From IMG/VR virus record IMGVR_UViG_3300033145_003233, positions 434,001 through 498,000 of that record: a stretch of DNA of 64,000 nt; one strand, 5' to 3'. Position numbers and translations under genes: made by a program. Positions 2,184 through 64,000 of the stretch are shown here, one piece after another; the stretch's first letter is position 1, and each line of letters starts with the position of its first letter. The notes beneath the pieces are model-generated. The model did no database searches and was not told the DNA's origin. It worked only from the letters and a program-made list of their open reading frames with translations.

Positions 2184-2289
2184 TTTATTACTCCATAAAT
2201 TAAGTATTACTTACCTCAACAATATTACTACTTTAACCCTTTTTCTATATTATAGTAAAAAAGCATTTGTCTGGAAAATTATTTACTGA

Positions 2290-2318: not shown

Positions 2319-2343
2319 GAGGAATATTGAAATAAAAAATTAA

Positions 2344-3318: not shown

Positions 3319-3366
3319 TAAGCTAACTCCCTATAAATACAACTCACTATATTATATATCGGCTTT

Positions 3367-4680: not shown

Positions 4681-4858
4681 CACGATTACACCCCCCATTA
4701 TATGCCACATCTTGCACTCTATTTATATCGACATGAATATTATCATTATATAATCTTCTAATTTCTCCCAAAATTTTATGATATGCCTCATCTGGATCTC
4801 TATAACTCAAAAATAAAGAGGCTAACAGACTAATTCTATCATTATTTTCTTTTAACAT
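4670..4858 (-). CDS. Small hypothetical protein (about 62 aa), first gene of the leftward cassette
   Basis: GGAG SD about 8 nt before ATG 4858. The track start at 4891 lies inside the palindrome/promoter. The stop overlaps the start region of the zinc-ribbon gene. Confidence 0.5.
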   Translation of the reverse strand: MLKENNDRISLLASLFLSYRDPDEAYHKILGEIRRLYNDNIHVDINRVQDVAYNGGCNRDDE

Positions 4859-40494: not shown

Positions 40495-41587
40495 ATAACT
40501 CTTTCACCATCCCCATAAACATATTGCTAATTTTTGAATAATTAAATCTTTCCCTCACATAAGAATATGCTCTATCAGTTTTAATTTTTATATAATCTTT
40601 GTGATTAATTACATATCTCATAGCTTTTTGTATTTTGTTTACCTCTATAAATGCCCATTTTTTATTTCTAAATTGTGGAATATTATCCATGTTATTATGA
40701 AGAATAAATCCGCTTGGCTCAATTAGAACGGCTGTATCTTCGTTAGCATAATCTTTACACCCAGCATAATTTGTTATAATAACAGGAATCCCCAATGCCA
40801 TACATTGAAGACCAGGATACCCGAATCCTTCTCCCATAGTAGGAGAGATCAAACAATCTACAGATTTTATAAAATTTGGCAAAACCTTTTCATTAAACAC
40901 TTTATTTTCAAAAATTATAGGGGCAAATCCTTTGTTTATTCCCAATTGACCCCTAAGCTTATTAAAATATTGCTCTGCCTTTTTAGGCTTGTCAGTTTTT
41001 ACTAATAATTGGACTCCATCAGTATCTTTAAATTCCCTACCCCATGCTTCCAACAATTGTTTATATCCCTTTCTTTCTTTCCAAATACCTATGAATAAAA
41101 AAGTATATTTATCAAAATTATCTAAAGGAACGATATCTCTATGATAAGTTTCAATATCTATACAATGTGGGATATAATAAAGCGGCTTTTTAATCGTCAT
41201 ATGTGAGAAAATCTTATAATTAAATTGAGAAGGAACTATGATAGCATCGTTTTCATTAAGGATATCCACCCAATGATCGGGAGGCTGAAATGTTTCAAAA
41301 GTAGCAAAACCTATACTTCTATGATGTTTCTTTTTTACCCTTTTTTGGATATTTGGGATACAATGATATATTAAAATTCTTTCAGGATTATCCTTCTTTT
41401 TTGCCATCCTCATAAAAAATTCATATTTTTCATCACTAATAGCTGGTTTAGATGGCCTACCCCCAAAAGTAGTAATTTTGATATCAAAATAACCAGTTTT
41501 TTCTAAAGAAAAAATATAATTTTGAGCTGCTTGGGAATAACCTGACTGATTTAGGAAACATATCCAATTAAGCTTGATTTTTTCCAT
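40487..41587 (-). CDS. Glycosyltransferase, GT-B fold, family 4-like
   Basis: SGYSQAA N-terminal loop, TFETFQPP.HW...DAIIVPSQFN, YYIPHCID, FLFIGIWKERKGY, SPTMGEGFGYPGLQCMALGIPVI. Confidence 0.9.
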   Translation of the reverse strand: MEKIKLNWICFLNQSGYSQAAQNYIFSLEKTGYFDIKITTFGGRPSKPAISDEKYEFFMRMAKKKDNPERILIYHCIPNIQKRVKKKHHRSIGFATFETFQPPDHWVDILNENDAIIVPSQFNYKIFSHMTIKKPLYYIPHCIDIETYHRDIVPLDNFDKYTFLFIGIWKERKGYKQLLEAWGREFKDTDGVQLLVKTDKPKKAEQYFNKLRGQLGINKGFAPIIFENKVFNEKVLPNFIKSVDCLISPTMGEGFGYPGLQCMALGIPVIITNYAGCKDYANEDTAVLIEPSGFILHNNMDNIPQFRNKKWAFIEVNKIQKAMRYVINHKDYIKIKTDRAYSYVRERFNYSKISNMFMGMVKELYG

Positions 41588-48486: not shown

Positions 48487-51400
48487 CTATAATATATTCA
48501 TAACTTCTAAGGTAAGATTATCCAAACCATCTATTATTATTCCATTCAAATTGCCAAAACTATCTTTGTAAAATACTCTTATTAAACCATTCACAGTAGT
48601 ATAAGCATAAACCTGTGTGTCAGAATCTACTTCAAACCTCTCATCAAATCTTTCTAACATTTCTTTATCATATGGGAAACGAATAAATAGTGAAGAGTCA
48701 GAATCATTTATTCCATCATCTATTTCCCCAATTTTTACTCCCTTTATATTATCGGGGATTTTGCCAACTAAAAATATAGGTCTATGTACAGTATCTTCTG
48801 TAATCTTAAGATGTTCTCTCATCTGATCATCATATTTATTCCCGCTTGAATCATAATAAGGGAATAACAGATCAGAATAAAAATGCCGTATAAACAGCAT
48901 CCCATAATGAAAATATAATACTGATACTAAATTAGTATTATAATCGTTTCTAACTATTTGTATGTTCTGTATTTCTTCTGATAAACCTCTATTTAACTCA
49001 TCGTCAAGATAAGTCTTATGAATCACTTGTTCTTCTATATCATAGCTCCAAGTAAAATAATTATCACTTCTTTTAACAGATAATTTGCCTTCTTTTAACA
49101 TGAATAAACGAAGAATGCCTTCTCCATCTAAATAAACCGCGTACGGATTACCCTCAAAATCACCCTTCATCTCATTTGTATTTCCAGAAAATTCAAAACG
49201 AGGAATTTGTTTTTTATCAGTATCAAAAGTAGCAGGATTAGGTGGATCTTCATTATATATATTAATATTATCTCTAATCTCTATTTGATCCTTAAAATAC
49301 TCATCATCAAAATATCCATCAATAAAATAACTTGGAAAACGCCTAAGAGAAAGACCCTCCGTAGAATAATTCCCCCAATAAGCTCTCTCTGGATCATCTA
49401 GAGACTGGTCGTAATCCCCCACATCATAAGAAGAAGGAACTGCATATTCTACAAAAGCATCCTCTTCAACTAGTAAATTAGTATTAATCCTTTTATACAT
49501 CAAAAAAGAACCATTAAGAGTGTAAAAAAGATGAATATAATCAGAATTAACATCTTTGATAACAAAAGGCATACCAGCAAATTCTCCCTCAACCAGCCTA
49601 ATTAAATCCCTGTGAATTAACCATTCTTCTCCATCATTAAGAGAAGTAGCAACATCAATATTACCAGAAGTTGTATTCGCATAAAAAACTAACAACTCTC
49701 CCATCCCATCATATACAACTGCACTTTGACCAGATTTTATCTTATAACTGTCCAAATCAAGTTGCAGAGTACTATTGGGATTACTTACCCCTACAAATCT
49801 TCCATCTATTTTTGTTATATCTATTTTCTTCCAAAAAGCACCTAAGAATTGGACAGGACCACCATAATAATAATTAAAATCAACAATCATTTTGGTTGTT
49901 CCATCGATAGTAGCTCCAGACTTAAAAACCCTAAAATTACTTACAGAACTTTCTGTTTGCTCAAAATAAAAAGAAATATATTTTTCTTTCTCCGTCAATG
50001 TCTCATAATTAGCATAAGAAAATTCTATTTCCAATCTCTTAACATACCAATCAGATGGAATAATTAACTTAGGAGGATCATCATCAAAATCAAGATTAAA
50101 AGCAGAACCAGTTCCATCATACAATTCTTCTGTCCACCAAAAATCTCCCTCTTCTATATCCTCCATTCTACAAATATTAATAATATCATCTGCAACAGGA
50201 GAACCGTGGCTATAACTAGGTCTATCCCCCAATATTCTATTTTGACCTACTATTAAACTGCCATCATGATTATAGGCATCTTTTACATGACTTTTAGAAG
50301 TATCGATATGCAATGCTTGCAACTGACCCTCAAAAAAGTCATCATTTAATTTATGATATGACAAACCATAATTAACATTTTCATCATTAAATGCTAAAGT
50401 AGATGCCCCTATATAATTATTAGTATCTAAAGATATGTTATGGGGAACAAATGGCTGTGTATCAACATATATCCAGCTATAATTATCTAAAGAATTCCCT
50501 GCCATTTTTTCAATATATACCCTCGTTCTTCTTGTAAAATTTCCACAAAAATAAGGAGTTTCAGCTTTCCAGTAACTTTCTATTGAAGCCCCACTAGGTC
50601 TCCATTCAAAAACTTCATTCTCTATATGATCCACATCATACCAAGCCCCTGGACCTTCACTTTGAGCATCATAGTTTTGAGACCAATAATTATAAGAATG
50701 TATATGAAATGGCTCTTCACAAGAATAAGATTTTAATGGTTGGGCATTAGCTGTTTCAAAATCTATGAAAGATAAATCATAATATTTAAGATCTATAGAA
50801 GAACTCAAAGACATAATATCTAAATGGGAAATCCCGACCCCAGAAGTATCAGAATCATCACTATATGTGCTAACATTTTTCAAGGCTTCAGCAAATGGCC
50901 TATAATAGGGAATTTTTTCTCTATCGAATAACAAACTATTAGCAACTTCAGATATGTCAAATAAATACCCAGGCTCTCTATCTAAATCTATTCTGTTTTC
51001 TATGGATATATTTAAATCAGATGGCAGATAAGATCCATCAGTTCCTGAAGGATAAGTAAAATCTAAACCTTCCAAATAATCTGTAAACCAATCCTGATCT
51101 CTTATCTCAGATCGTGGAAGCATTACTGTGATATCTCCATCATCATATAATAATACTCCTCGATAATCCGCCGCCCAGAATTTCTTTACACTAGTAGAAA
51201 TAGATTCTGATAATCTCCATCCCTCTATTTCATCTGCCACATCAGTAAGATTAAAATCGTCTTCTTCTCTTTCTCTTCTTTTTATTGTAAAATAATTAGA
51301 TGAAGCAAGAACGTAATCGCTATCAGAAGAATAATAATCTTCTAATAAATCTATATTATATATAGTTAACCCAGTTGGTAATTTAGGAACTTTCCATGTC

Positions 51401-52449
51401 TTTATTTGATAATTCCAAGCATCTACATCACTAGCTATGGCCCCTATAAATCCTGAGATACCAATAGTATTGCCCTGACCTATCTTGCCCAGATGAGATA
51501 AGTTCTGCCTAAGATGCCTATTAGAGGCAACTGAATAAGTAATATAAATAGTTTCCCCTATAACTAAATCAGAAACATCTATTCTAATTTGTTTATCTGT
51601 AGCATCTATACCAGCTACTCCGCTCAATTTATAAGGATATGCTTTACCTCCAGAGGCATCATAATTATCTCCGCGAAACTTTAATTTTCTTTCATCTCTC
51701 ACTACCTTTATAAATAGCTGTTCTTGATCCTCATATTTAACATCTTCAAATTTTACCTCTTCATCTCCAGCTCCTCCGAACAACCCATCACTATCTGTAG
51801 CCCCATCTATCCTTTTTCTCCTTGACCCCCTCCATGTTCCATCACTATATTTTCCCAATATATCTAATTGCTCAGGAGTGAAAGGAAGACCAACCACCCT
51901 ATCAACATTATTTTCATCTTCTTCTTCTGTAATTATATGCCTCTTTACTATACCGAAGACAGAAAGGGGATAACTATTTAAAGAAATGATTCCAGTATCT
52001 AATATTTGTTGATTGACTTTGATTGGATAATTTATTTTAGTTTCTGCATCAAGTAAGTGTAAGGTTATATATGTCAACCCAGATGTTACCCCCCCAAATC
52101 CCATAGATGGTAATGCAAAATTACCTATCAAACCCATCATAGGAATAAAAGAAAGAGCACCAGGAGATATGGGATTCCGAACTGCGCTTTTCATTACCTT
52201 ACTAAAATCTATTTCAACTTTTATTTTACTGGCCGGTAATAATTTCTTTCTTTCTACTACTTTGATAATATTACCATCTTCATCCCTATCAACTATATAA
52301 ACAGTTCCTTTAGGAGGATTTTTTAATCTGTTAATATTGAATGTATCAACAGGAACATATTCTTTATTGATAGATGTTTTTATATAGCCATCTCTAATTA
52401 AATCGCTATTATCATAACAAAGATATGTTCTTCTATTATTAAAAGCCAT
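48487..52449 (-). CDS. Large virion protein immediately downstream of the tape-measure-like gene (distal-tail position), with Asp-box/propeller-like C-terminal part
   Basis: Gene position; VATSLNDGEEW Asp-box; IHLFYT, LRLFML and IRVFYKD blade-like strands. No family recognised. Confidence 0.45.
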   Translation of the reverse strand: MAFNNRRTYLCYDNSDLIRDGYIKTSINKEYVPVDTFNINRLKNPPKGTVYIVDRDEDGNIIKVVERKKLLPASKIKVEIDFSKVMKSAVRNPISPGALSFIPMMGLIGNFALPSMGFGGVTSGLTYITLHLLDAETKINYPIKVNQQILDTGIISLNSYPLSVFGIVKRHIITEEEDENNVDRVVGLPFTPEQLDILGKYSDGTWRGSRRKRIDGATDSDGLFGGAGDEEVKFEDVKYEDQEQLFIKVVRDERKLKFRGDNYDASGGKAYPYKLSGVAGIDATDKQIRIDVSDLVIGETIYITYSVASNRHLRQNLSHLGKIGQGNTIGISGFIGAIASDVDAWNYQIKTWKVPKLPTGLTIYNIDLLEDYYSSDSDYVLASSNYFTIKRREREEDDFNLTDVADEIEGWRLSESISTSVKKFWAADYRGVLLYDDGDITVMLPRSEIRDQDWFTDYLEGLDFTYPSGTDGSYLPSDLNISIENRIDLDREPGYLFDISEVANSLLFDREKIPYYRPFAEALKNVSTYSDDSDTSGVGISHLDIMSLSSSIDLKYYDLSFIDFETANAQPLKSYSCEEPFHIHSYNYWSQNYDAQSEGPGAWYDVDHIENEVFEWRPSGASIESYWKAETPYFCGNFTRRTRVYIEKMAGNSLDNYSWIYVDTQPFVPHNISLDTNNYIGASTLAFNDENVNYGLSYHKLNDDFFEGQLQALHIDTSKSHVKDAYNHDGSLIVGQNRILGDRPSYSHGSPVADDIINICRMEDIEEGDFWWTEELYDGTGSAFNLDFDDDPPKLIIPSDWYVKRLEIEFSYANYETLTEKEKYISFYFEQTESSVSNFRVFKSGATIDGTTKMIVDFNYYYGGPVQFLGAFWKKIDITKIDGRFVGVSNPNSTLQLDLDSYKIKSGQSAVVYDGMGELLVFYANTTSGNIDVATSLNDGEEWLIHRDLIRLVEGEFAGMPFVIKDVNSDYIHLFYTLNGSFLMYKRINTNLLVEEDAFVEYAVPSSYDVGDYDQSLDDPERAYWGNYSTEGLSLRRFPSYFIDGYFDDEYFKDQIEIRDNINIYNEDPPNPATFDTDKKQIPRFEFSGNTNEMKGDFEGNPYAVYLDGEGILRLFMLKEGKLSVKRSDNYFTWSYDIEEQVIHKTYLDDELNRGLSEEIQNIQIVRNDYNTNLVSVLYFHYGMLFIRHFYSDLLFPYYDSSGNKYDDQMREHLKITEDTVHRPIFLVGKIPDNIKGVKIGEIDDGINDSDSSLFIRFPYDKEMLERFDERFEVDSDTQVYAYTTVNGLIRVFYKDSFGNLNGIIIDGLDNLTLEVMNIL

Positions 52450-52467
52450 AAGAATATATTTTCATAA

Positions 52468-55400
52468 TTAGGCAGAATATGTACCTAGGGTCTCACTCAT
52501 CATACCAGGAACTGCTTCATGCAAAGCAGTATTTATTCCCTTTGCCACCTTAGTAGAAAGGTCATTTAAACCAGATATATTTATATCAAATCGTGCATTC
52601 TCTAAAACAACAGTAACAGTATTAGCTGAAGTAGGAGCAGATATTAACCCCTTCTCTGCTTCTGAGAAAACAGGTTTTGTGGGATCAGTACCATAAACAC
52701 TTTCTGTAGGTATTAATAATTGTTGACCTCTTGCCGAAACCTCAGAAGTTACCCCTTCCCTACCAGGACGACCAACTAAATCAGCCCCCACTTTAACTTC
52801 TTGAAGAGCTTCTCTCTCAATAGCTACCTTAACTTCTTGAGGAGCTTCTCTCCCAACAGCTACCTTAACTTCTTGAGGAGCTTCTCTCCCAACAGCTACC
52901 TTAACTTCTTGAGGAGCTTCTCTCCCAACAGCTACCTTAACTTCTTGAGGAGCTTCTCTCTCTCCTGGCATTGCCTCACCTGATCTGAGTAAGCCAAACA
53001 TTTTAGGGGGCATTAATTGCTCCCATCTCCCAAACTCCTCCTCTTCTCCTATTCTTGGAGGCATCCTGCGTGTCGGCCTTATTGTTCTCCCACCACCTCT
53101 TCTACCATCGTCCCTACTTAAGCGATGTTCCATTCTTCTTTCAGAACGACTAGGACGAGGTTGATATTCTCTCCCCATCATAATATCTAACCTAGTACGT
53201 CTGCCCTCCCCTGCTTCCCTGCCTCTTGCTCCCCTACGGCGAGAAACTTTAGGCCCGACTCCTCTTTTGGCAACAATCTTTTCTTGTTCCCTTTCCCTTC
53301 TTTTCTCCCAATCAACATATCCTTCTACTTCTCTAACTGCTCCTGGAGCAGCAGGAGCCTCTGGAGGTACAACAGCAATCCTTGCAGTGTCCTCAGATGG
53401 AACTATAATCGTCTGGGGAGCAGGCATGGTGGCCACTTCTGTTCTTCCAATTTTCTCTTGCTCTATCTGAAGACGCGAACGTTGAGCAAATAGTCCCTCA
53501 CGCTCACTGTAAACAGTTTCTAATTTTCTTTTTGTATCATCACGACCTGCTTCAGCGGCCTGAGCATATTGAAATGGTGGCTGATCTTTTAACCCCTCAA
53601 TTTTACTATCATAAACTCTCCTATTCTTTTCCCACTGTTCCCTATTCGCTGCCGCATCTGCTATTAATTCATCCGAGAGATTTTTAATTATGTCCCCAGA
53701 GGCCTCTCCCTCTTTAATAGTCTTTGCATGAACCTCTCTAGACCATTCCTTACCAACTCCAACCCCCGTTTCTCTTTCCATCCTAACCAATACCCCTTCA
53801 TCTTCATCTGATCCAGATTCCTCATACTGCTTAAATGCTTGAAGATACATATATGATGGAGTCTTCTTCTCTCGTTGTGTTTTTATCTTCTTTCTTCTGA
53901 TAGCCTTTAAACTAGGCGCTCCAATAGTAAACCCTGGAGGCACACCTTCATATTTTTCTATTTCTTTTTCTTCTCTAGGCTCCTCTCGTATCATTAATGC
54001 CACTTTATCAGCTTGCTCCCTGAGTGTCTGTATCTGTGCGGCAATTTTTGCTCCTTCATCGCGAACTTTTTGTCTAGCCGCTTCGCTCTTACCAGTTAAA
54101 TCTAATTTTCCCTCTAAGGTTATAATTCCAGTATCAGGAGCATAAAGAATATTTTCAAGATGTGTCATTTCTCTATTCTTAGTCTCTATAACTTTATCTA
54201 CATCTTGAATTTCCCTAGTTTTACGCTCATATGGAGCCTGTATCTCCTTAGCTTTATCAAGATATTCAGTTGATAATCCAGAAGCAACTAAACCAGGTTT
54301 ACCACCCTCTGCAATTATCTCTTCCTCCCTACCCATAGCAAATTTACGACCAGCACTCTTACTTACTTCTTGCTCTAACTGAACCGAGGCCAATGCCATA
54401 ACACTACCCTTCTGTTCACTAGCAGATTTTTTATATTGACTAAGGAATCTGGAAATTATATTACCAAGCTCATCATCAAAATCTTCTTGAGCTATTCCTA
54501 AATCTTTTTGAGCTTTTGCGACTACCCCATGGGCAACACGAATCTCTTTTATACTCATACTGCCACTACCCTTTAATCCATCATAAACATTTTTCATATC
54601 TGAAACATTATTGGTAGCTTCCTGAACTGTCTTCCCGAATTCTCCTAATCTATCAATAGCTCCATTCATTTGATCAAAATCAAAATCTGGAGAAGTATAA
54701 ATGCCTTCCCTAATTCTATTAATTTCCTCTTTCGATAAAATCCCATCAATAGACAACTCCTGTAAAAAACTAGATGTTTTTTCTGCCTTATTTATAAAAG
54801 CCTGGGTATTAGCTACTATATCTCTTGTTGAGCTATAGACATTCCCGAAATTAACCAGCAAATCTTTGAACCTAACATCCTTTGTTTCTATTTCCATAGC
54901 ATCAACAATTGATTTTAGCTCATTATAAATTCTATCATAATTCTTTTTCCCTATATCTAAAGTAATAACAGGAACCTTACCAACTCCCTCTACAATCTCT
55001 TCTGCACTAGTTGCAGTCCCTATAATGCTCTCTAAGAAATTAGAAATCGACACTCCTGTTTCTTCAGAAAAATCATTAACACTCCTATAAAATTCAGAAA
55101 AATATTTAACAAATTGTTGCTTGTCAAGATTTAAAGCTCTAGTAGCTTCATTAATTTCTACCTCAATATTGGGGAATAACCTTGCTAGCTTATCCATAGG
55201 CAATCCTATATCTATACTCTCTACTCCCTCAGGAATATGAATAGCCGACAACATCTTCTGAGGAGATCTAATATATGTCTCGAAATCTTGATGAAACTTA
55301 ATAAGACTGCTCATCAAGACTCCTTTATCAATCTTATCGGGATCAATAATTTCCTCAAAATCCACTCTTAATTCACTAATAGTTTCATTTATTAACTTAT

Positions 55401-58400
55401 CTACTTCAGAAAAGTTTAATATATATTTTGCTGTTTTGCCAATAACTCCTATATTCTCGGCATTAATTCCCAGCAAGGTTTTCTCAACTAAATCCAAAAC
55501 CCTGTTCTTGTATTCATCAATACGAGTCTCAACAAGCCCAAGTTTACCAACTGGTTCATAAATAGCCTGACTAATAGAATCAAAAATATCCTTTATAGAA
55601 GATGTGTTAATTTCTGTTCCAGCCTCATACTCTAAATATTTTTCTACATCTTTCAGAACTATCTCTGCCCTCTCTGGTCTATTTTTAACATCAACAGCAG
55701 CAGTAAATAAATGAGGCATTTCTTTAATTATCACTGTAACTATATCAGGAGGTAAACCATCTTGTATTTGCCCACTAATGCTTGATAATATTTTACTTGC
55801 AGAAAAAACCATTTGTTCTTTAAAATCATCAAATTTTTCTCTAGGGAGTTTTATATCAGCAAAAGAATCTTTAACAATTTTACCAAAATCGACATTTAGC
55901 TCAGGGGCCTTCTCTCCAGCAAATTTATTATATAAATCAGCTATATCGGAAATTGATATACCCATTTTAAGAGACATATTACTAGCGGCCGTATTTAATT
56001 CATCAAAACTATTTACAAATTTAGCCTTGTCTGAAGCATCAACAATCATCATAGATTCGGCAAGAGAATCTAATAAATCAGTCATTTCTCCAACTGGAGT
56101 CTGAACATCAGGTTGGACATAAGACTTAGCTATATTCTGAAGAATAATAGTTGGAGTATCTGTTATTTCTATATCCACTTCTTTAATTTTTTCATAAAAT
56201 TTTTGCAAATTACCCAGTACAGCAGTAGCTTTTTCTGCTGGCACATTCATCTTATCCATATTAAACAAAACAGCCAACTCCGGAGGTTCACCAATCGTCA
56301 CATCTTCTTTTCGATATAGCAATTTTATAGCTTCTACATATGCTTTGACTCCCTTCCAATCTAATTCTCTATCATCAATAGGAACCAATATAGCATCTGA
56401 CAATTCCTCAACCTCAAACTCCACCCTAGGAATACGCTTAGTAACACCCTGCATCGTAACTTCTTCAGGCATTCCTTGAAGTAAAATATCATATCTATAT
56501 TTTTTATCAAACTCATCTTTTGCTGTTAATTCTATAAATTCAGGAACATTCTTTGCTATTAACTCAAGAGCAGAAACATTATTGGGTAATGTTATATCTG
56601 CAAGGCCCTCAAATTTGGTTTTAAGGACATTAGAAATACGCTGTGCAGAATCAACTGCCGCCTCTTTTATTTTTATAATTTGAGTATCATCTAATCCCCA
56701 ACTCTTACCCACTCTTTTTAATCTATCATCTAGGGAACTACTAAATCTAATAGCTCTAGCTAATACATCATCAAATGGCTGGCTAGTAGCTAATGAAATA
56801 TCTGTTATCTTTCTATTTAAACCACCAAAATCCGTAAGAAGTTTAGTTGTGCTTATATTCATACTAGTAGCCATCATATTTAATTCTTTTGTAAGATCTG
56901 GAGTTGGTAATTCCACTTCAAAAACCTTATCAACATTAGTTATAAGAACACTAGGCCTCCTATCAGTTCCCTCTACATCTCCGACAACATGATATGCTTC
57001 TTCTGTTAAATCCAAAATAGTAGAAACATCAACTTCTTGAGGCAACTGAGCATTTAATAATATAGAATCAAGAACCTGAGGTAATTTAAAAACAACTTCA
57101 GTAGGAAGCTTAGACCAGTCAGCTAAAATACTAAACTCAGTAACCAAATTCTTAACATACGCCTCTGCTTCTAATCCTCTTAAATTCTGCTTATCAAGAT
57201 CAAGAGCTACTTCTCTAGGAACTTGACTTAAAATTGCCGTGACAGTAGGCACATCTATAGCTCTTAATCCTATTTTTTCAGGAGCATCCTCTACTACAGT
57301 TTTTACTTTTCTCTCTATGTTTTCAGGATCTCCATATAACTCTAAAACTTCTGGTATTGATTTTATAATTATCTGCCTATCTTCTGAGGATATATCATCA
57401 AATGTTTTCTCAAAAACTTTATCAACAACTTTATTTAACTGAGGATTTATCTCATTTATAGCCATAATATTATGACTAAACGCCTTCCCCAAAGAAATAT
57501 AAATGTCCTCCATCTTTATTTCAGATGCTCTTTTTATTTTATCAATTCTACGTTCATCAATATTGAAATCGGAAAAAATATTATCTATCTTATTAGGCCA
57601 AGATTTCATAGCATCAAATATTTCATCAACAGAACGACCCGTTGCCATAGACATCTCTTTGATACTATTAAATACTGGAGAAAAATCTGATTCAAACTCT
57701 ATTTCACTATCATATCCCAAATTCCTGGCCACAACAGGAAGCATATCAGGAATTCGGATATCAGCAGTAACTTTATAAACATCTTCAAGACTCTTAATAA
57801 TCACATGAGCCTCTTCTGGCTTCTCAATCACCTTAGTTTTTAAAAGAACTTTCTCTATTTTATCCGGAAATCTCAAAACAGCAGCAGAAGGCTCTCCCCT
57901 AACCTTAGTAGGCATTGCCACAATAAGCTCTGCTACATCATAATATGCCTCTGCTTCTATATCTCTTAAATTACCATCTTTAACAGGGACCTTTATAGTT
58001 TTCGCTATTTCTGTTAATGCAAATACTGCATCAGGCATTTTTTCTAATCTACCTTCTATTGTCCCAGGTAGCTTAGAAATATCCAAATCTACTATTTGCT
58101 CTGGCTTACTCTCTGCCAGCATAGAAACAACACTTGGCAGAGCCTCATATAAAACATCTATCTCTAGATTATTTAACCCTTGGATCTGTTTTTCTATAGA
58201 TCCGAAAATAGCAGTAGATTGTTTAAAAAGAGTAGCTTGAACTTTTTTAATACTATCAGGATCTACATCCCTTATCTCAATAGAAGAAATTGCTGTATCC
58301 AACTTATTGAATAAGTTATATACATCATCATCTGAAAATTGAAGGATAGGTATCCTAATATCTCCTTCTACTTTAGCAGGTATTTTTATAACTTCTTGTA

Positions 58401-61400
58401 ATAATTTATAATATGCTGTTACTTCTAAACCTCTCATCTCCCCTTCAACAATCGGAATTCTAACTGTCTCAGCAATATCGGTTAACGCTGTTTTAACAGG
58501 AGGAACCTCTGCTAGTTCAACAGGTAACTCTCCAGGAAATGAAGAAATATCTAATAATATTGGATCAGTAAGAGGAGTTTTAGCTGTCATCGCTATAGTA
58601 TGAGGCAAAGCCCTAAAAAGAACCTCTACATCACTGTCGTCCAGCGTCTCAATCTGATCTTTTATTGATTTAAAAATAATAGATGACTGTTCTTTAATCG
58701 TCTCTTGAATATTTTTAACTTCTTCTAGATTTACTTTAGGCACATAAGTAGAGGCGATAACATAATTTAATCTTTCAAAAATTCTCATCACATCTTCTTC
58801 TGGAAATCTCAATACAGTAGGATCAACTTGCCCCTGCACAACAACAGGCATATCTACAACCTGTTCAGCTATATTATAAAATGCCTCTATTTCTAAATCA
58901 GAGAAATTCTGTCTAGCAGGAATTTGGATAGATTTAGCTATCCCCTCTAATTTAACCATAGGTTCTTCTATCTTTTCTAATTTAGCCCTCACTTCATCTG
59001 GAAAATTAGAAATATCTAACTCCACAGGTTTAGTAGGATCTTCGCTTTTAGCCATCATAGAAATAATAGTAGGTAATGCCTCAAATATTACCTTAACATC
59101 CGTATCTTTTAATCCATCAATTTCCTCATGTAATGATTCAAATATAGCTGAAGAGTGCTTTTTAAAAGTATCTTGAACCTTCGCTAAATGTGCTGGATCT
59201 ACTTTAGGAACGTATACGGAAGTAATAAGAGTATTCAATCTATTAAATAAAGCCACTACATCATCTTCTGGAAATTGCAAAACAGATGGCTTTATGTCTC
59301 CCTCTATCTGAGTAGGTAATTTTATAATCTGTTCAGCTATATCATAATATGCCTTAACCTCCACACCACTTAAATCTCCCTCCTCAACAGGAACCCTGAT
59401 AATTCTTGCTATCTCTGTTAACTTTATTTCTGCCCTTGGTATATCTTGCAAGTCAGCAGCAATACCGTCAGGAAACGAAGAAATGTCCAGCTTAACTAGT
59501 GGAGTCGGTTCGCTTTCTACCATCATAGAAACTACTTCTGGCAAAGCCTTAAAAATTACTCTTACTTGCTCATCGTTTAACCCTTCTATTTGTTGCTCTA
59601 TAGATCTAAATATCTCAGCAGATTGCTTTCTAAGAGTATCTTCAATTGCTCTTATCCTTTGAGGATCTACTTTTGGAACATACACAGAAGTAATAAGATT
59701 ATTTAACTCTGTGAAAAGATTATATACATCTTGCTCTGGGAATTGTAAGATAGAAGGCTTAACCTCTCCCTCTACTATAGTTGGTATTTTTACAAATTGC
59801 TCTGCCACCTCATAATATGCTACTACTTCCAGCCCGCTGATATCCCCCTGTTTCACAGGAACCTTAATAGTTTCCGCTATCCCTGTCAACAGGATCTCTG
59901 CATCTGGTATCCCGAGAAGCTTAGCCTTTATTTCATCAGGGAATTTAGAAATATCCAAATCAACATCTTTTTCAGGCTCACTCTTAGCCAGCATAGATAC
60001 AACATCAGGCAAAGCATCGAATATAACCTGAATATCAACATTATCCAATGCCTCTATCTGTTTATTTATAGATTCAAAAATAGCTGATGATTGTCGAATA
60101 AGAGTAGCTTGCACCTTTTTAATACTACCAGCATCAACATCGGGAATACCAACAGATAAAATAATGTCATTTAATTGCCTAAAAGTATCAAAAACACTGT
60201 CGATAGATACATCAGCGCTATCAGAAATGTCCTCTATTATCTTATAGATAGGAGAATAATCCATTACAAATTGATCACTTCTAATCCCTAAATTACTAGC
60301 AGCAGCATTAATAGATTGTTGCAATCTAATAGCCACATCTGTAGTTGCCTCCTCAACTCGAGAAAATACCTTTACTAACACATCAAATGGATTCTCTTCT
60401 ATCTCTAATTCGCTCTTAAGAATATCTCTCCATCCTGTAAAAATTAAAGCAGATTTTTCTGGCGGAATATTTTCCTCAACAATTTTACTAACAAACTGAT
60501 CCCTCCATCCTGATAATTTCATTGCAACTTCTTCTGGAGGTAATATACCATATTTAACAAATTGATTGAAAGAATCAATAGCATCATATATCTTTGTGTG
60601 AAGATAAATAGGCGGAGCTTCTTTATATACAGCTTCCTGCCTAAATGAAGAAACATAATTTTCCACAAAAGTTTCAACTCTTTCTGGAGGAAGATCTTGA
60701 TATTGCACAGTTGATCTGAATTCTTTAATTATTTCCTGAATATAAGCAGGAATATTTTCAGGAGGAATTTCATCATAATAGATATGCTGAACAAATGATT
60801 TAATATAATCGCTAATAAGGCCAGGAACTTCTTCCTCAGGTAACTTAAGGTATGTGGCTCTTTGTGCGAAAGCTTCTATAGATCCGTCTAGAAATATTTG
60901 TGCTTCTTTAGGAAGATCAGGGTACATAGCATATTGGGTAAACGATTCTTTCAGCCGTCTTAATATAACCTCAAACCTAGTTTTTGGGACATCTTCGTAA
61001 GTAGCATATTGAGTCAAGTCCTCCATAACATTTCTTATCGAAGCTGGAATATTACGTGGAGGAACTTCCCTATAATCTACTACTTGCCTTAACGCCGACA
61101 TCGAATCCTTAATTATCCCTTTAATTATCTCTGGTGGGAAATCCTCGTATGTAACACGTTGCACGAATGCCGCTTTTGAACCTCTAATAAATGCCTGAAC
61201 TTCTTTAGGAACATCTTCCTGATAAATTGCCCATTGGTCAAATGCCGTTTCAAAATTATGCATCACACCGACTACACTACGAGGAGGCAATTCCCTATAA
61301 ATAACTGACTGTCTTAAATATTTTAAATATTGTTTTACAAACCCAGGAATCTGACTGTCAGGCAACTCGCTATATAAAATATTCTGAACAAAAGATTTTT

Positions 61401-64000
61401 GAGCGCCCGTTAGTATAGCGTCCATAGTCTCTGGTATTGCATCTTTATATTCTATTGACTGAGTGAACTCATCAATAGCCCCCTCTAAGAACAAACTTAC
61501 CTCTCTAGGAAGAGTTCTATAATCACCATATTGAGTAAACGAATCTATAACCTTCCTAACTACAACATCTATTTTATTCTCTGGTATATCTGCATAAGAA
61601 AAATATTGCTCGAATTGTGTAATAACTTCTTTGATAGAAGCTGGGATTATCTTGTCAGGAAGCTCAGTGTATCTAAGATGTTGATTATATAACTCAATCG
61701 CCCCCTGTATAAAAGCAGGGACTCTATATTTGGGAAGCTGCTCATATTTCATGTGCTGAACAAAACTTGATTTAGCATCTCTAACAAAAGTTAATATTTC
61801 TTCTGGAATATCTTGGATATATACAGCTTCTTGCTTGGTGAATTTTTTAACATTCTCTACAGCCATCGTTATTTTATCAGATATCTCCGTCTGATAATCA
61901 GCATGTTGTATCATAGATGAAATAACATCGCTAATAAAGAAATCAACTTCTATTGGGAAGTCTTTATATCTGGACTCCTGCTTATATTCTTGTATCACTC
62001 CTTTTATCGTAGCAGACACATCTTCAGGAGGTATCTCTTTATATTTAACCAATTGATTTATATCATTTATGAATCCGCTAATAAAAGAAGGTATATTTTC
62101 TTCTGGCAAATCAGAATAAACTAGTCTCTGCTGATAAAATCTTAGCGTGTCTTTAACAAAAGTGCGTATTTTCTCAGATGGCATCAACGGATAAACTGCT
62201 CTTTGAGTTATAGATTCCATCAAATCAGTTACAAAGAGTTGGACTTCATCTGACACAGGCTTGTATTCAGCCTTCTGTTTGAAATCTCTTATAATATTAA
62301 TTATTTCTGCATGAACCTTCTCATGTGGGAATTGCTCATCGTCATATTCAACATACTGTTTTAATCTATCTATTGCCCCACTCATATACCCAGGAATTTC
62401 TTCTGGAGGAACCTCTCCGTAAACTACCTTCTGATTCCAAGAATTAATAATATTAGTTAACCATGCATTAGCCTTAGCCGGAGGCTTAATAGGATAATAA
62501 GCAGTTTGGGTAAAATCTGCCATAACATCCCTCACAAAGAATTGAACCTCTTGAGAAATTTTTTCTGGATATTGAGCCTCCTGTCTATAAGATTCTATAA
62601 ATTTATCAACCTCCATATTGACTTTCTCTGGAGGGATAACAGTATAAGAAGCATATTGTTTTATATTATTAATAAAATCTGTGACATACGTTGGGATCTG
62701 AGCAGGTGGTAAATCTTTATATTCCATAGATTGAGCATAAGAAGTTATAGCTCTTTTTATAAAAGCAGGTATCTTTTCAGATGGCAAGGTAGTATAAGAA
62801 ACATATTGTAAAATAGATTCTTTTACCCCCTGCACCTCTCCACTTATTTGCTTAGGAATTTCATCTCCATAAAGAGTATATTGTATAAATGAGTCCTTAA
62901 TACCCCTAAGCATAACAGGGATTTTAGAAGGCGGAATATTAACATGCTCTAGATGTGGTCTAAACTTATTGATAATATTATCATACTGAACCTCTACCTC
63001 TTCCGGCATTTTTGTAACTTCTACAATATTCCTTGTAATCCTATCTTTAGCAGCAGTTTCTCCGCTATATGCCAAAAATAAATCATCCGTATTTAATCCG
63101 AATTCAATTACTTCTCTTTTTACAGCATCTACCCCAGATGTAATCCCCTCATAATTAATCAATAACTCTTCTAGAGACAATCCCTTATCGGTGGCATACC
63201 TTTGCAAAACTTTTGTATAACCCACAATAATCTCTTCAACCCTTTTAGGAGGTTGCTCTGTTAGTTCTGCCACCCTATATATTTCAGAAACAAATCCAGA
63301 AAATATCTCTGGAACCTTCTTAGAAGGTAAACCAACTTCATCAGCAAATCTTTTAATTTCTCTAGTAAAACCAGAATAACGAGTAATAACTTCCAGTGGA
63401 GGAAGATTTTGCTCTTTAGCCACTCTCATTATCTCTTTTGTGAAACCAGTATAATAAGTCAGAACCTTTTCTGGCGGTAAATTATATTCCTTAGAAATCC
63501 TAATAATTTCTTTAGTAATATTCTGATAATAGATTTTTAACGGATCTTTTACTATTTTTTCTTCTACTGCTCCCTCAATGCCATCCATTGATACTGCCAT
63601 GCCCTGAAATAATACTCTCATAAATCTAGCTTGCTGTTTAACTTCGTCTGTAATGTTCTTTTTAAATTGAGCTTCTTTTCTTTGCGAAGAAGAAATATCT
63701 CCCTGAATTTCTCTCTGACCAGCAAGTTGAGATTGTGCTAAAAATAATGCCTTTTTTCTATGAGCCACAATCTCTGTTTCAAGTTCAACTGCCTTAGATC
63801 TCCATTTGAAAGAATCTGCACCAGCTGTCCCTAATACTCTCATGCGCTCATTTAGAGTAGTTAACATGCCCTCTTTTAATGTTGCCGCTTTCAACTCATC
63901 GTATGCCATTATCTCTCTGGTTCGAGATATTAATTCTTGCATACGAACTTGATCGATAACTTCTACGCCAATCTTTTGAATAGCTTTAAAATATTTCTCC
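52468..64000 (-). CDS. Giant repeat-rich protein, tape-measure-like, 5'-truncated (>3843 aa)
   Basis: The frame stays open from track ATG 63942 to the window edge (EKYFKAIQKIGVEVIDQVR-MQEL). It is largely helical with coiled-coil stretches, has a TMP-like C-terminal tail (TVTVVLENARFDINISG...), and lies directly upstream of the tail-tip-like genes. Confidence 0.6.
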   Translation of the reverse strand, partial: EKYFKAIQKIGVEVIDQVRMQELISRTREIMAYDELKAATLKEGMLTTLNERMRVLGTAGADSFKWRSKAVELETEIVAHRKKALFLAQSQLAGQREIQGDISSSQRKEAQFKKNITDEVKQQARFMRVLFQGMAVSMDGIEGAVEEKIVKDPLKIYYQNITKEIIRISKEYNLPPEKVLTYYTGFTKEIMRVAKEQNLPPLEVITRYSGFTREIKRFADEVGLPSKKVPEIFSGFVSEIYRVAELTEQPPKRVEEIIVGYTKVLQRYATDKGLSLEELLINYEGITSGVDAVKREVIEFGLNTDDLFLAYSGETAAKDRITRNIVEVTKMPEEVEVQYDNIINKFRPHLEHVNIPPSKIPVMLRGIKDSFIQYTLYGDEIPKQISGEVQGVKESILQYVSYTTLPSEKIPAFIKRAITSYAQSMEYKDLPPAQIPTYVTDFINNIKQYASYTVIPPEKVNMEVDKFIESYRQEAQYPEKISQEVQFFVRDVMADFTQTAYYPIKPPAKANAWLTNIINSWNQKVVYGEVPPEEIPGYMSGAIDRLKQYVEYDDEQFPHEKVHAEIINIIRDFKQKAEYKPVSDEVQLFVTDLMESITQRAVYPLMPSEKIRTFVKDTLRFYQQRLVYSDLPEENIPSFISGFINDINQLVKYKEIPPEDVSATIKGVIQEYKQESRYKDFPIEVDFFISDVISSMIQHADYQTEISDKITMAVENVKKFTKQEAVYIQDIPEEILTFVRDAKSSFVQHMKYEQLPKYRVPAFIQGAIELYNQHLRYTELPDKIIPASIKEVITQFEQYFSYADIPENKIDVVVRKVIDSFTQYGDYRTLPREVSLFLEGAIDEFTQSIEYKDAIPETMDAILTGAQKSFVQNILYSELPDSQIPGFVKQYLKYLRQSVIYRELPPRSVVGVMHNFETAFDQWAIYQEDVPKEVQAFIRGSKAAFVQRVTYEDFPPEIIKGIIKDSMSALRQVVDYREVPPRNIPASIRNVMEDLTQYATYEDVPKTRFEVILRRLKESFTQYAMYPDLPKEAQIFLDGSIEAFAQRATYLKLPEEEVPGLISDYIKSFVQHIYYDEIPPENIPAYIQEIIKEFRSTVQYQDLPPERVETFVENYVSSFRQEAVYKEAPPIYLHTKIYDAIDSFNQFVKYGILPPEEVAMKLSGWRDQFVSKIVEENIPPEKSALIFTGWRDILKSELEIEENPFDVLVKVFSRVEEATTDVAIRLQQSINAAASNLGIRSDQFVMDYSPIYKIIEDISDSADVSIDSVFDTFRQLNDIILSVGIPDVDAGSIKKVQATLIRQSSAIFESINKQIEALDNVDIQVIFDALPDVVSMLAKSEPEKDVDLDISKFPDEIKAKLLGIPDAEILLTGIAETIKVPVKQGDISGLEVVAYYEVAEQFVKIPTIVEGEVKPSILQFPEQDVYNLFTELNNLITSVYVPKVDPQRIRAIEDTLRKQSAEIFRSIEQQIEGLNDEQVRVIFKALPEVVSMMVESEPTPLVKLDISSFPDGIAADLQDIPRAEIKLTEIARIIRVPVEEGDLSGVEVKAYYDIAEQIIKLPTQIEGDIKPSVLQFPEDDVVALFNRLNTLITSVYVPKVDPAHLAKVQDTFKKHSSAIFESLHEEIDGLKDTDVKVIFEALPTIISMMAKSEDPTKPVELDISNFPDEVRAKLEKIEEPMVKLEGIAKSIQIPARQNFSDLEIEAFYNIAEQVVDMPVVVQGQVDPTVLRFPEEDVMRIFERLNYVIASTYVPKVNLEEVKNIQETIKEQSSIIFKSIKDQIETLDDSDVEVLFRALPHTIAMTAKTPLTDPILLDISSFPGELPVELAEVPPVKTALTDIAETVRIPIVEGEMRGLEVTAYYKLLQEVIKIPAKVEGDIRIPILQFSDDDVYNLFNKLDTAISSIEIRDVDPDSIKKVQATLFKQSTAIFGSIEKQIQGLNNLEIDVLYEALPSVVSMLAESKPEQIVDLDISKLPGTIEGRLEKMPDAVFALTEIAKTIKVPVKDGNLRDIEAEAYYDVAELIVAMPTKVRGEPSAAVLRFPDKIEKVLLKTKVIEKPEEAHVIIKSLEDVYKVTADIRIPDMLPVVARNLGYDSEIEFESDFSPVFNSIKEMSMATGRSVDEIFDAMKSWPNKIDNIFSDFNIDERRIDKIKRASEIKMEDIYISLGKAFSHNIMAINEINPQLNKVVDKVFEKTFDDISSEDRQIIIKSIPEVLELYGDPENIERKVKTVVEDAPEKIGLRAIDVPTVTAILSQVPREVALDLDKQNLRGLEAEAYVKNLVTEFSILADWSKLPTEVVFKLPQVLDSILLNAQLPQEVDVSTILDLTEEAYHVVGDVEGTDRRPSVLITNVDKVFEVELPTPDLTKELNMMATSMNISTTKLLTDFGGLNRKITDISLATSQPFDDVLARAIRFSSSLDDRLKRVGKSWGLDDTQIIKIKEAAVDSAQRISNVLKTKFEGLADITLPNNVSALELIAKNVPEFIELTAKDEFDKKYRYDILLQGMPEEVTMQGVTKRIPRVEFEVEELSDAILVPIDDRELDWKGVKAYVEAIKLLYRKEDVTIGEPPELAVLFNMDKMNVPAEKATAVLGNLQKFYEKIKEVDIEITDTPTIILQNIAKSYVQPDVQTPVGEMTDLLDSLAESMMIVDASDKAKFVNSFDELNTAASNMSLKMGISISDIADLYNKFAGEKAPELNVDFGKIVKDSFADIKLPREKFDDFKEQMVFSASKILSSISGQIQDGLPPDIVTVIIKEMPHLFTAAVDVKNRPERAEIVLKDVEKYLEYEAGTEINTSSIKDIFDSISQAIYEPVGKLGLVETRIDEYKNRVLDLVEKTLLGINAENIGVIGKTAKYILNFSEVDKLINETISELRVDFEEIIDPDKIDKGVLMSSLIKFHQDFETYIRSPQKMLSAIHIPEGVESIDIGLPMDKLARLFPNIEVEINEATRALNLDKQQFVKYFSEFYRSVNDFSEETGVSISNFLESIIGTATSAEEIVEGVGKVPVITLDIGKKNYDRIYNELKSIVDAMEIETKDVRFKDLLVNFGNVYSSTRDIVANTQAFINKAEKTSSFLQELSIDGILSKEEINRIREGIYTSPDFDFDQMNGAIDRLGEFGKTVQEATNNVSDMKNVYDGLKGSGSMSIKEIRVAHGVVAKAQKDLGIAQEDFDDELGNIISRFLSQYKKSASEQKGSVMALASVQLEQEVSKSAGRKFAMGREEEIIAEGGKPGLVASGLSTEYLDKAKEIQAPYERKTREIQDVDKVIETKNREMTHLENILYAPDTGIITLEGKLDLTGKSEAARQKVRDEGAKIAAQIQTLREQADKVALMIREEPREEKEIEKYEGVPPGFTIGAPSLKAIRRKKIKTQREKKTPSYMYLQAFKQYEESGSDEDEGVLVRMERETGVGVGKEWSREVHAKTIKEGEASGDIIKNLSDELIADAAANREQWEKNRRVYDSKIEGLKDQPPFQYAQAAEAGRDDTKRKLETVYSEREGLFAQRSRLQIEQEKIGRTEVATMPAPQTIIVPSEDTARIAVVPPEAPAAPGAVREVEGYVDWEKRREREQEKIVAKRGVGPKVSRRRGARGREAGEGRRTRLDIMMGREYQPRPSRSERRMEHRLSRDDGRRGGGRTIRPTRRMPPRIGEEEEFGRWEQLMPPKMFGLLRSGEAMPGEREAPQEVKVAVGREAPQEVKVAVGREAPQEVKVAVGREAPQEVKVAIEREALQEVKVGADLVGRPGREGVTSEVSARGQQLLIPTESVYGTDPTKPVFSEAEKGLISAPTSANTVTVVLENARFDINISGLNDLSTKVAKGINTALHEAVPGMMSETLGTYSA
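52793..52960 (-). repeat. 36-bp in-frame tandem repeat, 4.7 copies, encoding (REAPQEVKVAVG)n
   Basis: Unit TTAACTTCTTGAGGAGCTTCTCTCCCAACAGCTACC starts at 52793, 52829, 52865, 52901 and 52937. The three central copies are identical. Confidence 0.97.
57856..60195 (-). repeat. Five tandem ~156-aa (468-bp) repeats in the giant protein
   Basis: Units run from VxxLFxxLN...S.YVPKVDP to ...GLEVxAYY...VLQFPEDD. The span is 2340 bp, equal to 5 x 468. Confidence 0.92.
60420..63528 (-). repeat. About 40 tandem 25-aa repeats in the giant protein
   Basis: Consensus QxxxYxxLPPExIPxFIxxxIxxFx, about 32 copies from 62883 downward. It is preceded by about 8 YxGFxxEIxRxxxExxLPxxxV copies with roughly the same period. 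Confidence 0.9.

What the first reader, a model, noticed from the sequence alone, without database searches (positions are those of the whole stretch)
52468..64000. Giant tape-measure-like protein with a three-tier repeat hierarchy
Seen: >3843 aa and still open at the window edge. It contains ~40 x 25-aa units, 5 x 156-aa units plus degenerate copies, a coiled-coil region, an Arg-rich tract and 4.7 x 12-aa units. Established: tail length scales at about 0.15 nm per TMP residue, and classic TMP repeats are 11/18-aa helical units. Inference: if this is a TMP, the visible part alone implies a tail of roughly 570 nm or more, or some repeats fold into globular domains with another job such as an ejection conduit or inner core. 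No transmembrane segment or PF10145-like domain was evident in the visible part.
Basis: partly seen in the sequence, partly recalled or inferred. Interest (0 to 1): 0.7.

Follow-up and report, generated by a model that had tools for sequence, protein, structure and literature searches.

The report
Giant repeat-expanded phage tape measure protein
This is the tail tape measure protein of an uncultured 548-kb megaphage; at 5,139 residues it is 133 longer than the tape measure of Thermus phage P74-26, the virus with the longest known tail, and it grew by tandem copying of helical modules, so the phage probably carries a tail of several hundred nanometres to nearly a micron.

Summary
The frame at window 52468-64000 (minus strand) is open to the window edge. 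In the full 547,943-bp virus record it runs on to an ATG 3,887 nt further, giving a 5,139-aa protein.

I confirmed about 41 x 25-aa units, 5 exact 156-aa units plus 3 degenerate copies, a tract with 31% Arg, and a 36-nt x 4.7 tandem repeat. These are three arrays lying side by side, not a nested hierarchy.

The tape measure protein (TMP) reading is strongly supported:
- The gene order is tail tube (PF18906), then a G/GT chaperone pair with a conserved -1 slippery heptamer, then a ~140-aa ORF, then the giant gene, then a conserved 1,320-aa gene.
- Four related phages keep this order. Their proteins at this position are 1,125, 1,725, 3,414 and 4,400 aa.
- The first ~1,100 aa, which lie outside the window, are homologous to 259 metagenomic representatives. 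Members of that family hit TMP PHROGs.
- A short C-terminal motif is weakly shared across the family.
- No second TMP, tail sheath or contractile-baseplate family was found in the genome.

The visible ~3,800 aa are a lineage-specific middle section. It is predicted helical, at low confidence.

The tail length is inferred, not shown: about 0.77 um at 0.15 nm per residue.

This is a new, extreme member of a known kind.

The parts
52468..64000 (-). C-terminal 3,843 codons of the 5,139-aa tape measure gene. The gene continues to window-equivalent 67887, outside the window.
63532..64000 (-). Residues about 1297-1452. This is a Pro-free helical stretch between the conserved N-terminal module and the 25-aa array. 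It weakly resembles residues about 820-1040 of the N-module.
60403..63531 (-). Array of about 41 x 25-aa units (residues 1453-2495). The consensus is Y-x-[DE]-[LIV]-P-P-E-E-[IV]-P-A-F-[IV]-x-[GD]-[VA]-I-x-S-F-x-Q-Y-[AV]-x. The model shows one 13-21-residue helix plus a Pro-containing linker of about 6-11 residues per unit.
57853..60192 (-). Five tandem units of exactly 156 aa (residues 2566-3345). They are 30-55% identical in protein and 50-66% in DNA. About six helices are predicted per unit.
55399..57513 (-). Three degenerate, insertion-bearing copies of the 156-aa unit (residues 3459-3612, 3721-3878, 4007-4163). This region is collinear with the 3,414-aa relative P0003.
53032..53241 (-). 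Arg-rich tract (residues 4883-4952, 31% Arg).
52793..52960 (-). 36-nt x 4.7 near-perfect tandem repeat that encodes GREAPQEVKVAV units.
52477..52635 (-). C-terminal motif (residues 5085-5137), read by eye as strand-strand-helix. It is weakly shared with family members of every length and is proposed as the end that docks at the tail tip.
   Evidence: own E 0.0015
48487..52449 (-). Conserved 1,320-aa gene immediately downstream (49-52% identity to the gene that follows the TMP in relatives). Presumed tail-tip or hub component; no family match.

Best explanation
The gene encodes the tail tape measure protein (TMP) of a 548-kb uncultured megaphage that most likely has a long non-contractile tail.

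Shown here. The protein has a conserved N-terminal module of about 1,100 aa, which includes two Gly-rich, weakly hydrophobic segments. It has a short C-terminal motif weakly shared with family members of every length. Between them lies a middle section of about 3,900 aa that the shorter relatives lack. That middle is built from tandem arrays: about 41 x 25 aa, 5+3 x 156 aa, and 4.7 x 12 aa.

Inferred by analogy with characterised TMPs. Chaperones G and GT keep the protein soluble. Its C-terminus docks on the tail-tip complex. Tube subunits polymerise around a TMP trimer until they reach its N-terminus, so every added repeat lengthens the tail. On infection the TMP is expelled ahead of the DNA.

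The middle section therefore acts as a length-setting spacer that grew by unit duplication:
- At 0.15 nm per residue the tail would be about 0.77 um.
- At the ratio of P74-26 (5,006 aa, tail 'nearly 1 um') it would be closer to 0.9 um.
- If the helix-linker units fold back on themselves the tail is shorter. Three chains of 565 kDa still need about 160-330 nm of a 4-nm lumen.

My odds: the gene is the TMP, about 0.9; the tail exceeds 0.6 um, about 0.45.
For: Synteny.
- The order is tube protein (PF18906, 7e-14; phrog_290), then a 144-aa ORF, then a -1-frame ORF of 81 codons, then a 139-aa ORF, then the giant gene, then a conserved 1,320-aa gene.
- The same order is found in four related contigs, L005 to L008.

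Programmed frameshift.
- The 144-aa ORF ends in CTG GGA AAC TAA. The heptamer G_GGA_AAC is kept in four phages while the stop codons and neighbouring bases differ.
- In L008 it is replaced by A_AAA_AAC, another canonical slippery heptamer.
- The -1-frame peptide is conserved across the phages. In L008 it lacks the ATG that the others have.

Homology.
- Residues 80-1039 align over most of the 1,125-aa protein at the same position in L005 (its residues 32-965; 35% identity, E 2e-138).
- 259 representatives match the first 1,200 aa, 90 of them at E<1e-30. Lengths among the 150 listed reach 4,400 aa.
- Of 37 members scanned, 10 hit phrog_167, 9 phrog_794, and others phrog_28, 1272, 934, 1293, 9570, 24 and 1533. 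All of these are TMP families.
- phrog_794 hits only this gene in the whole genome (E 1e-10).

Length variation in the middle.
- P0003 (3,414 aa) shares the same modules but has only one 156-aa unit and far fewer 25-aa units.
- P0014 (4,400 aa) carries 12 x ~145-aa units of an unrelated kind.

No competitor and no contractile parts.
- No PF10145, PF20155 or phrog_167 match elsewhere in the genome.
- No sheath (PF04984, PF17482), gp25-like (PF04965) or Baseplate_J (PF04865) match.

Secondary structure. Both repeat types are predicted all-helical with regular breaks.

Precedent. The P74-26 TMP is 5,006 aa and that phage's tail is nearly 1 um (PMC10034513).
Against: - No Pfam TMP domain is detected.
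- The phrog_794 match covers the Gly-rich region and could be partly compositional.
- There is no match to any GenBank phage or to any solved structure.
- Both AlphaFold models are low confidence (pLDDT 55 and 49), so an extended versus a folded-back geometry is undecided.
- Prolines every 25 residues rule out one continuous coiled coil.
- The 1,125-aa relative shows that the N-module plus the C-terminus is already a complete TMP, so the insertion could have another role.
- No virion, proteome or read data exist; no sequencing run was listed.
- Absence of sheath and baseplate profile matches in a very divergent megaphage is weak evidence for a non-contractile tail.
Confidence: 0.85

Rival explanations
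1. It is the TMP, but the 3,900-aa insertion is mainly compactly folded helical cargo rather than a ruler. In this reading the 25-aa units form a helix-turn-helix solenoid and the 156-aa units form bundles. They are stacked in the tube lumen and expelled into the host, where they build or line a long channel through a thick envelope or serve some other post-ejection role. The tail is lengthened only modestly.
For: - There are regular Pro-Pro breaks every 25 aa, and about six short helices per 156-aa unit.
- The exact 156-aa unit length is kept despite 45-70% sequence divergence, as expected of a folded domain.
- The 1,125-aa relative is complete without the insertion.
- The relative P0014 expanded with a different unit whose sequence looks mixed alpha/beta by eye.
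Against: - No enzymatic or known globular domain was found in the insertion.
- The models are low confidence and match no fold.
- Anything inserted between the two conserved ends must still lie inside the tube, so by volume alone it must lengthen the tail.
- P74-26 shows that a TMP of about 5,000 aa can go with a tail of about 1 um (PMC10034513).
Confidence: 0.3
2. The giant frame is an artefact: an assembly chimera or repeat mis-join, or a fusion of a normal TMP of about 1,100-1,300 aa with a separate downstream gene.
For: - It is a single metagenomic contig, and no reads could be laid on it.
- The only protein of comparable length (2,826-8,993 aa) found in the word-indexed database was itself.
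Against: - Independent assemblies carry frames of 3,414 aa and 4,400 aa at the same position.
- P0003 is collinear with the insertion.
- The family's C-terminal motif lies at the very end of the frame.
- The repeat copies are only 50-66% identical in DNA, too diverged to cause a mis-join.
- The next gene is the conserved 1,320-aa orthologue, so nothing is missing between them.
Confidence: 0.04
3. It is not a tape measure at all. It would instead be another giant virion protein, such as an inner-body or ejected protein or an external fibre, that happens to lie in the tail module.
For: - No Pfam TMP domain is detected, and there is no cultured relative.
- The window holds many other giant structural proteins.
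Against: - Its position directly after tube and G/GT, with a conserved frameshift signal.
- TMP PHROG hits across the family.
- Conserved ends with a middle of variable length.
- No other TMP candidate in a record rated 100% complete.
Confidence: 0.05

Closest known systems
Thermus phage P74-26 / P23-45 tape measure protein gp95 (5,006 aa; tail nearly 1 um)
   Same: - Same gene position, after the major tail protein and a small chaperone-sized ORF.
- Same extreme size class.
- The tube proteins are of similar size (348 vs 368 aa), with a weak local similarity (E 4e-5 over 68 aa).
   Different: - No detectable sequence similarity between the two TMPs.
- No internal repeats detectable in the P74-26 TMP at the same thresholds.
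- P74-26 is an 83-kb thermophilic phage and its TMP is annotated with a metallopeptidase domain. This one sits in a 548-kb genome at 33% GC, has no enzymatic domain, and is 133 aa longer.
Lambda-type tail assembly module (gpV tube, gpG/gpGT chaperones with -1 frameshift, gpH tape measure)
   Same: - Same gene order.
- A slippery heptamer just before the stop of the G gene. By recall lambda uses G_GGA_AAG; here it is G_GGA_AAC.
- The T part is read in the -1 frame.
   Different: - An extra ORF of about 140 aa, possibly a G paralogue (hhalign E 2.8e-4, probability 41%), lies between T and the TMP.
- The TMP is about six times longer than gpH (853 aa, from memory).
- No PF10145 or PF09718-type domain was detected.
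Repeat-bearing tape measures of mycobacteriophages and lactococcal phages (Belcaid et al. 2011; Mahony et al. 2016, TP901-1; cited from memory and from the reference list of PMC10034513)
   Same: - Tandem repeats with conserved aromatic residues at fixed spacing. Here aromatic residues occupy position 1 (89%, Tyr), position 12 (54%) and position 20 (68%), so positions 1 and 12 are 11 apart.
- Differences in repeat number between relatives change TMP length.
   Different: - The unit length is 25 aa with a Pro-Pro linker and an almost invariant Gln22.
- A second array of much larger 156-aa units is present.
- The scale is different: the arrays add about 2,500 aa.
Uncultured family found here: 259 representatives, including P0003 (3,414 aa), P0014 (4,400 aa), L005 (1,125 aa) and L006 (1,725 aa)
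   Same: - A homologous N-terminal module of about 1,100 aa.
- The same neighbouring genes.
- The C-terminal motif, detected in part of the family.
   Different: - This is the longest member seen.
- Only P0003 shares the 25-aa and 156-aa modules, and in far fewer copies.
- The other long members expanded with unrelated units.

Membership tests
Phage tail tape measure protein (functional class) | The gene lies downstream of the tail tube gene and the tail assembly chaperones, and upstream of the tail-tip or baseplate genes. | tested here: met
   The order is tube (PF18906), G, T in the -1 frame, a ~140-aa ORF, the giant gene, then a conserved 1,320-aa gene. It is the same in five phages.
Phage tail tape measure protein (functional class) | A chaperone pair expressed through a programmed -1 frameshift lies just upstream. 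| tested here: met
   G_GGA_AAC sits directly before the stop in four phages and A_AAA_AAC in the fifth. The -1-frame peptide is conserved. Frameshifting itself was not measured.
Phage tail tape measure protein (functional class) | Sequence match to curated TMP profiles. | tested here: inconclusive
   phrog_794 matches residues 258-536 at E 1.3e-8 to 1e-10. Family members hit nine different TMP PHROGs. Pfam PF10145 and PF20155 give nothing.
Phage tail tape measure protein (functional class) | Hydrophobic or Gly-rich membrane-type segments. | tested here: met
   Residues 336-354 and 502-522 reach Kyte-Doolittle means of 1.4-1.5 within a region of 20% Gly. No dedicated TM predictor was available.
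Phage tail tape measure protein (functional class) | Largely alpha-helical, elongated protein. | tested here: inconclusive
   The AlphaFold models of both repeat types contain helices only (59-70% of residues, no strands), but pLDDT is 55 and 49 and the overall shape is not reliable.
Phage tail tape measure protein (functional class) | It is the only such gene in the genome. | tested here: met
   No other match to phrog_794, phrog_167, PF10145 or PF20155 in a record rated 100% complete.
Phage tail tape measure protein (functional class) | Protein length is proportional to tail length, and the protein lies as an oligomer inside the tube lumen. | not testable with these tools
   This needs particles or in vitro assembly.
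P74-26-like giant TMP (Oshimavirus gp95) | Sequence homology to gp95. | tested here: not met
   BLASTP finds no hit at E<0.01. The resemblance is in size and position only.
Contractile-tailed (myovirus-type) phage | Tail sheath and gp25/gpJ-type baseplate wedge genes. | tested here: not met
   PF04984, PF17482, PF04965 and PF04865 give no match in the genome. Very divergent versions could escape these profiles.

The most novel reading that the evidence does not exclude
This megaphage builds a non-contractile tail of about 0.8-0.9 um, equal to or longer than the current record holder P74-26. Tail length in this lineage would then be set in quanta by the copy number of helical modules. The 25-aa helix-linker unit (37.5 A as straight helix, about 40 A with a looser linker) would correspond to one tube ring; the P74-26 ring rise is 40.25 A. 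On this reading the family, from 1,125 to 5,139 aa, is a natural series of rulers spanning a more than four-fold range of tail length.
Probability: 0.3. Interest if true: 0.75.

Novelty: new member of a known kind. Interest (0 to 1): 0.5.

Why it matters
Tape measure proteins are the textbook molecular ruler, but how sequence modules translate into length is still poorly described.

This family keeps both ends of the protein and varies the middle from almost nothing to about 3,900 residues, by duplicating defined helical units. It therefore offers a ready-made deletion and duplication series for testing the ruler rule, including whether a repeat unit matches one tube ring.

It would also show that a genome of more than 500 kb can be delivered through a very long tail that is probably non-contractile. 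It gives a candidate for the longest viral tail.

Tubes of programmable length are also of interest for nanotechnology.

Tried and rejected
- Pfam and PHROGs on the visible part alone gave nothing useful.
- The word-indexed search for full-length relatives found only the protein itself.
- The ESM Atlas gave no usable hit for the 156-aa array or for the 1,320-aa neighbour.
- PDB sequence and profile searches with the N-module, the tube protein and the 1,320-aa family gave only chance-level coiled-coil hits or nothing.
- tblastn against GenBank phages found no match.
- Foldseek of both low-confidence models against the PDB found nothing below E 0.9.
- A three-copy complex prediction of eight 25-aa units returned 'no answer' (score 0.00, pLDDT 33-35). 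It is not used as evidence either way.
- Idea that the 156-aa unit is a hexamer of 25-aa units: rejected (hhalign E 0.22).
- Idea of a ~100-aa super-period in the 25-aa array: rejected. The autocorrelation simply decays.
- Idea that the 145-aa unit of P0014 is related to the 156-aa unit: not supported (E 0.077).
- Read-level check of the frame and of the 36-nt repeat copy number: no sequencing run was listed, in two tries (one search failed as busy).
- The crude heptad scan did not confirm a long coiled coil in the visible part.
- An alternative genetic code was considered and not needed. Code 11 gives 86% coding density with all three stop codons in use.
Full report
**What is there**

The window is bases 434001-498000 of a single 547,943-bp IMG/VR virus record that CheckV rates 100% complete. 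GC is about 33%. Nearly all genes are on the minus strand, and the standard code fits: 86% coding density with ORFs of at least 100 aa, and all three stop codons in use.

It ends in TAA at window 52468-52470 and is open to the window edge, 3,843 codons. In the full record it continues for another 3,887 nt to an ATG at genome 501887. The protein is 5,139 aa, stored as P0002.

**The repeats**

- A self-trained HMM finds 30 units of 24-25 aa between residues 1650 and 2445. More divergent units lie on both sides (1453-1650 and 2446-2495), giving about 41 units in all. The autocorrelation peaks at lags 25, 50 and 75 and then decays, with no higher period.
- The unit consensus is Y-x-[DE]-[LIV]-P-P-E-E-[IV]-P-A-F-[IV]-x-[GD]-[VA]-I-x-S-F-x-Q-Y-[AV]-x. 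Tyr1 is present in 25 of 28 units and Gln22 in 27 of 28. There is a hydrophobic stripe at positions 9, 13, 16/17, 20 and 24.
- Five units of exactly 156 aa follow at residues 2566-3345 (E 1e-74 to 1e-80). They are only 30-55% identical in protein and 50-66% in DNA, yet have no indels between them.
- Three degenerate copies follow at 3459-3612, 3721-3878 and 4007-4163.
- Near the C-terminus lie a tract of 31% Arg (residues 4883-4952) and a 36-nt x 4.7 repeat at 97% match (window 52793-52960).
- These are three adjacent arrays, not a nested hierarchy. The 25-aa profile does not match the 156-aa unit (E 0.22).

**Identity**

Upstream on the same strand lies a 368-aa protein that matches Phage_tube_2 (PF18906, 7e-14) and phrog_290.

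Next comes a 144-aa ORF that ends ...CTG GGA AAC TAA. An 81-codon frame is open in the -1 frame and overlaps that end. G_GGA_AAC is a canonical X_XXY_YYZ slippery heptamer.

In four related contigs the same heptamer sits directly before the stop, although the stop codon itself (TAA, TAG or TGA) and the neighbouring bases differ. In the fifth phage it is replaced by A_AAA_AAC, another canonical heptamer. The -1-frame peptide is conserved, and in that fifth phage it lacks the ATG the others have.

This is the signature of the G/GT tail assembly chaperones, which sit between the tube gene and the tape measure gene in long-tailed phages. That last point is established knowledge, Xu et al. 2004, cited from memory.

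A further ORF of about 140 aa follows. It may be a G paralogue (hhalign E 2.8e-4, probability 41%). Then the giant gene begins.

**The protein itself**

- Residues 258-536 match TMP family phrog_794 (E 1.3e-8). Across the whole genome only this gene matches it (E 1e-10).
- Residues 330-530 are 20% Gly and hold two weakly hydrophobic segments.
- An exhaustive phmmer search with residues 1-1200 found 259 representatives, 90 of them below 1e-30. Lengths among the 150 listed run from short fragments of a few hundred residues up to 4,400 aa.
- Of 37 members scanned, 10 hit phrog_167 and 9 hit phrog_794. Others hit seven further TMP PHROGs.
- No Pfam TMP domain is detected. No cultured phage has a relative.

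**Comparison with relatives**

The tube protein led to two IMG/VR contigs. Exact look-ups of P0003 and P0014 led to two more.

All five phages share the order tube, G, T, ~140-aa ORF, [X], ~1,330-aa gene. The last gene is 49-52% identical between phages. X is 1,125, 1,725, 3,414, 4,400 or 5,139 aa.

Most of the 1,125-aa protein (its residues 32-965) aligns with residues 80-1039 of the giant (35% identity, E 2e-138).

The last ~50 residues of proteins of all lengths show a common pattern. By eye it reads as strand, strand, helix, as in ...V-x-V-x-L-x-x-x-x-F-x-I-N-x-x-G-x-x-D-L.... An HMM of this pattern finds it in 16 proteins, always within 80 aa of the C-terminus. In the giant it scores a borderline E 0.0015.

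So both ends are kept and the middle varies.

- P0003 shares the giant's middle modules but has one 156-aa unit and only about a dozen 25-aa-type units.
- P0014 expanded with 12 copies of an unrelated ~145-aa unit.

Expansion by tandem duplication of a middle spacer has therefore happened repeatedly in this family. The visible 3,800 aa of the finding are such a spacer.

**Structure**

AlphaFold2 was run with shallow alignments made from the repeat copies themselves.

- The 25-aa array gives one helix of 13-21 residues plus a linker of about 6-11 residues per unit: 9 helices in 9 units, pLDDT 49.
- Each 156-aa unit gives about six helices and no strands, pLDDT 55.

The secondary structure is plausible. 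The three-dimensional arrangement is not reliable, and Foldseek found no similar fold. Whether the units lie end to end or fold back is therefore open.

**How it most likely works**

By analogy with lambda, T5 and P74-26 (established knowledge), a TMP trimer is held by G/GT. It is anchored by its C-terminus on the tip complex, and tube rings stack around it until its N-terminus is reached.

Every unit inserted between the conserved ends must lie in the lumen and lengthen the tube.

- At 0.15 nm per residue, 5,139 aa gives about 770 nm.
- The P74-26 TMP is 5,006 aa and its tail is 'nearly 1 um' (PMC10034513).
- If the units are compact, a volume estimate still requires 160-330 nm. The estimate takes 3 x 565 kDa at 1.21 A^3 per Da in a 4-nm lumen; this is my own arithmetic and assumes a trimer.
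- A 25-aa unit is 37.5 A as straight helix, close to the 40.25 A ring rise of P74-26 (PMC10034513). One unit per ring is an attractive hypothesis but is untested.

**Tail type**

No sheath (PF04984, PF17482), gp25-like (PF04965) or Baseplate_J (PF04865) match exists in the genome. No gene of sheath size precedes the tube gene. A non-contractile tail is therefore the better guess, with the caveat that the profiles may miss very divergent proteins.

**Novelty**

Tape measures, their repeats and a 5,006-aa example are all known, so this is a new member of a known kind.

What is unusual:
- its size, which is larger than any of the 150 family representatives listed and larger than the P74-26 TMP;
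- the host genome, a 548-kb megaphage with no cultured relatives;
- the clean modular record of how the ruler grew.

I could not check whether still longer TMPs exist in other public data.

Noticed in passing
outside the window: genome 507137-508162 (-) = L004:2137-3162; also L008:852-1913: A Volactin-family actin homologue (PF25216, E 4e-59) sits inside the virion/tail gene block. Relative L008 has one at the corresponding place. A phage-encoded cytoskeletal protein next to the genes for a very long tail is unexplained.
   Followed up: partly
outside the window: L003:16035-16454 (-): A conserved ORF of about 140 aa lies between the GT chaperone and the TMP in all five phages. It may be a paralogue of chaperone G (hhalign E 2.8e-4, probability 41%).
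   Followed up: partly
window 5143-52449 (-): The TMP is followed by an unbroken run of very large genes: 1,320, 1,119, 1,078, 1,331, 899, 701, 1,971, 1,958, 645, 2,035 and 1,039 aa. Several carry Kelch, Laminin_G_3, FG-GAP, fn3, VWA, Flg_new_2 or propeller repeats. This is a presumed tip and receptor-binding apparatus of about 47 kb. The first three genes have no family match at all.
   Followed up: partly
window 40487-41587 (-): A GT4 glycosyltransferase (PF13692 1e-15; phrog_2170 7e-32) is embedded among the giant tail genes. This hints at glycosylation of virion proteins.
   Followed up: no
L008:8001-21203 (protein P0014, 4,400 aa): A relative's TMP carries 12 tandem units of about 145 aa that are unrelated to the 156-aa units here. 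This looks like an independent expansion with a unit of similar size.
   Followed up: partly
window 52001-54000: GC rises to 0.405 against about 0.33 elsewhere. This coincides with the C-terminal part of the TMP that is rich in Arg, Gly, Ala and Pro and with the near-perfect 36-nt repeat. The repeat's 97% identity suggests a recent or unstable expansion.
   Followed up: partly
window 2-4710 (-): At the far end of the window lie a ResIII/DEAD helicase (cut by the window edge), a DUF4238 protein, and a protein with four DUF4379 treble-clef zinc-finger repeats (E 1e-66). None of these belongs to the tail module.
   Followed up: no
outside the window: L004:18361-19377 (-): A LAGLIDADG homing endonuclease gene (phrog_11023, 4e-20) lies in the structural region.
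   Followed up: no
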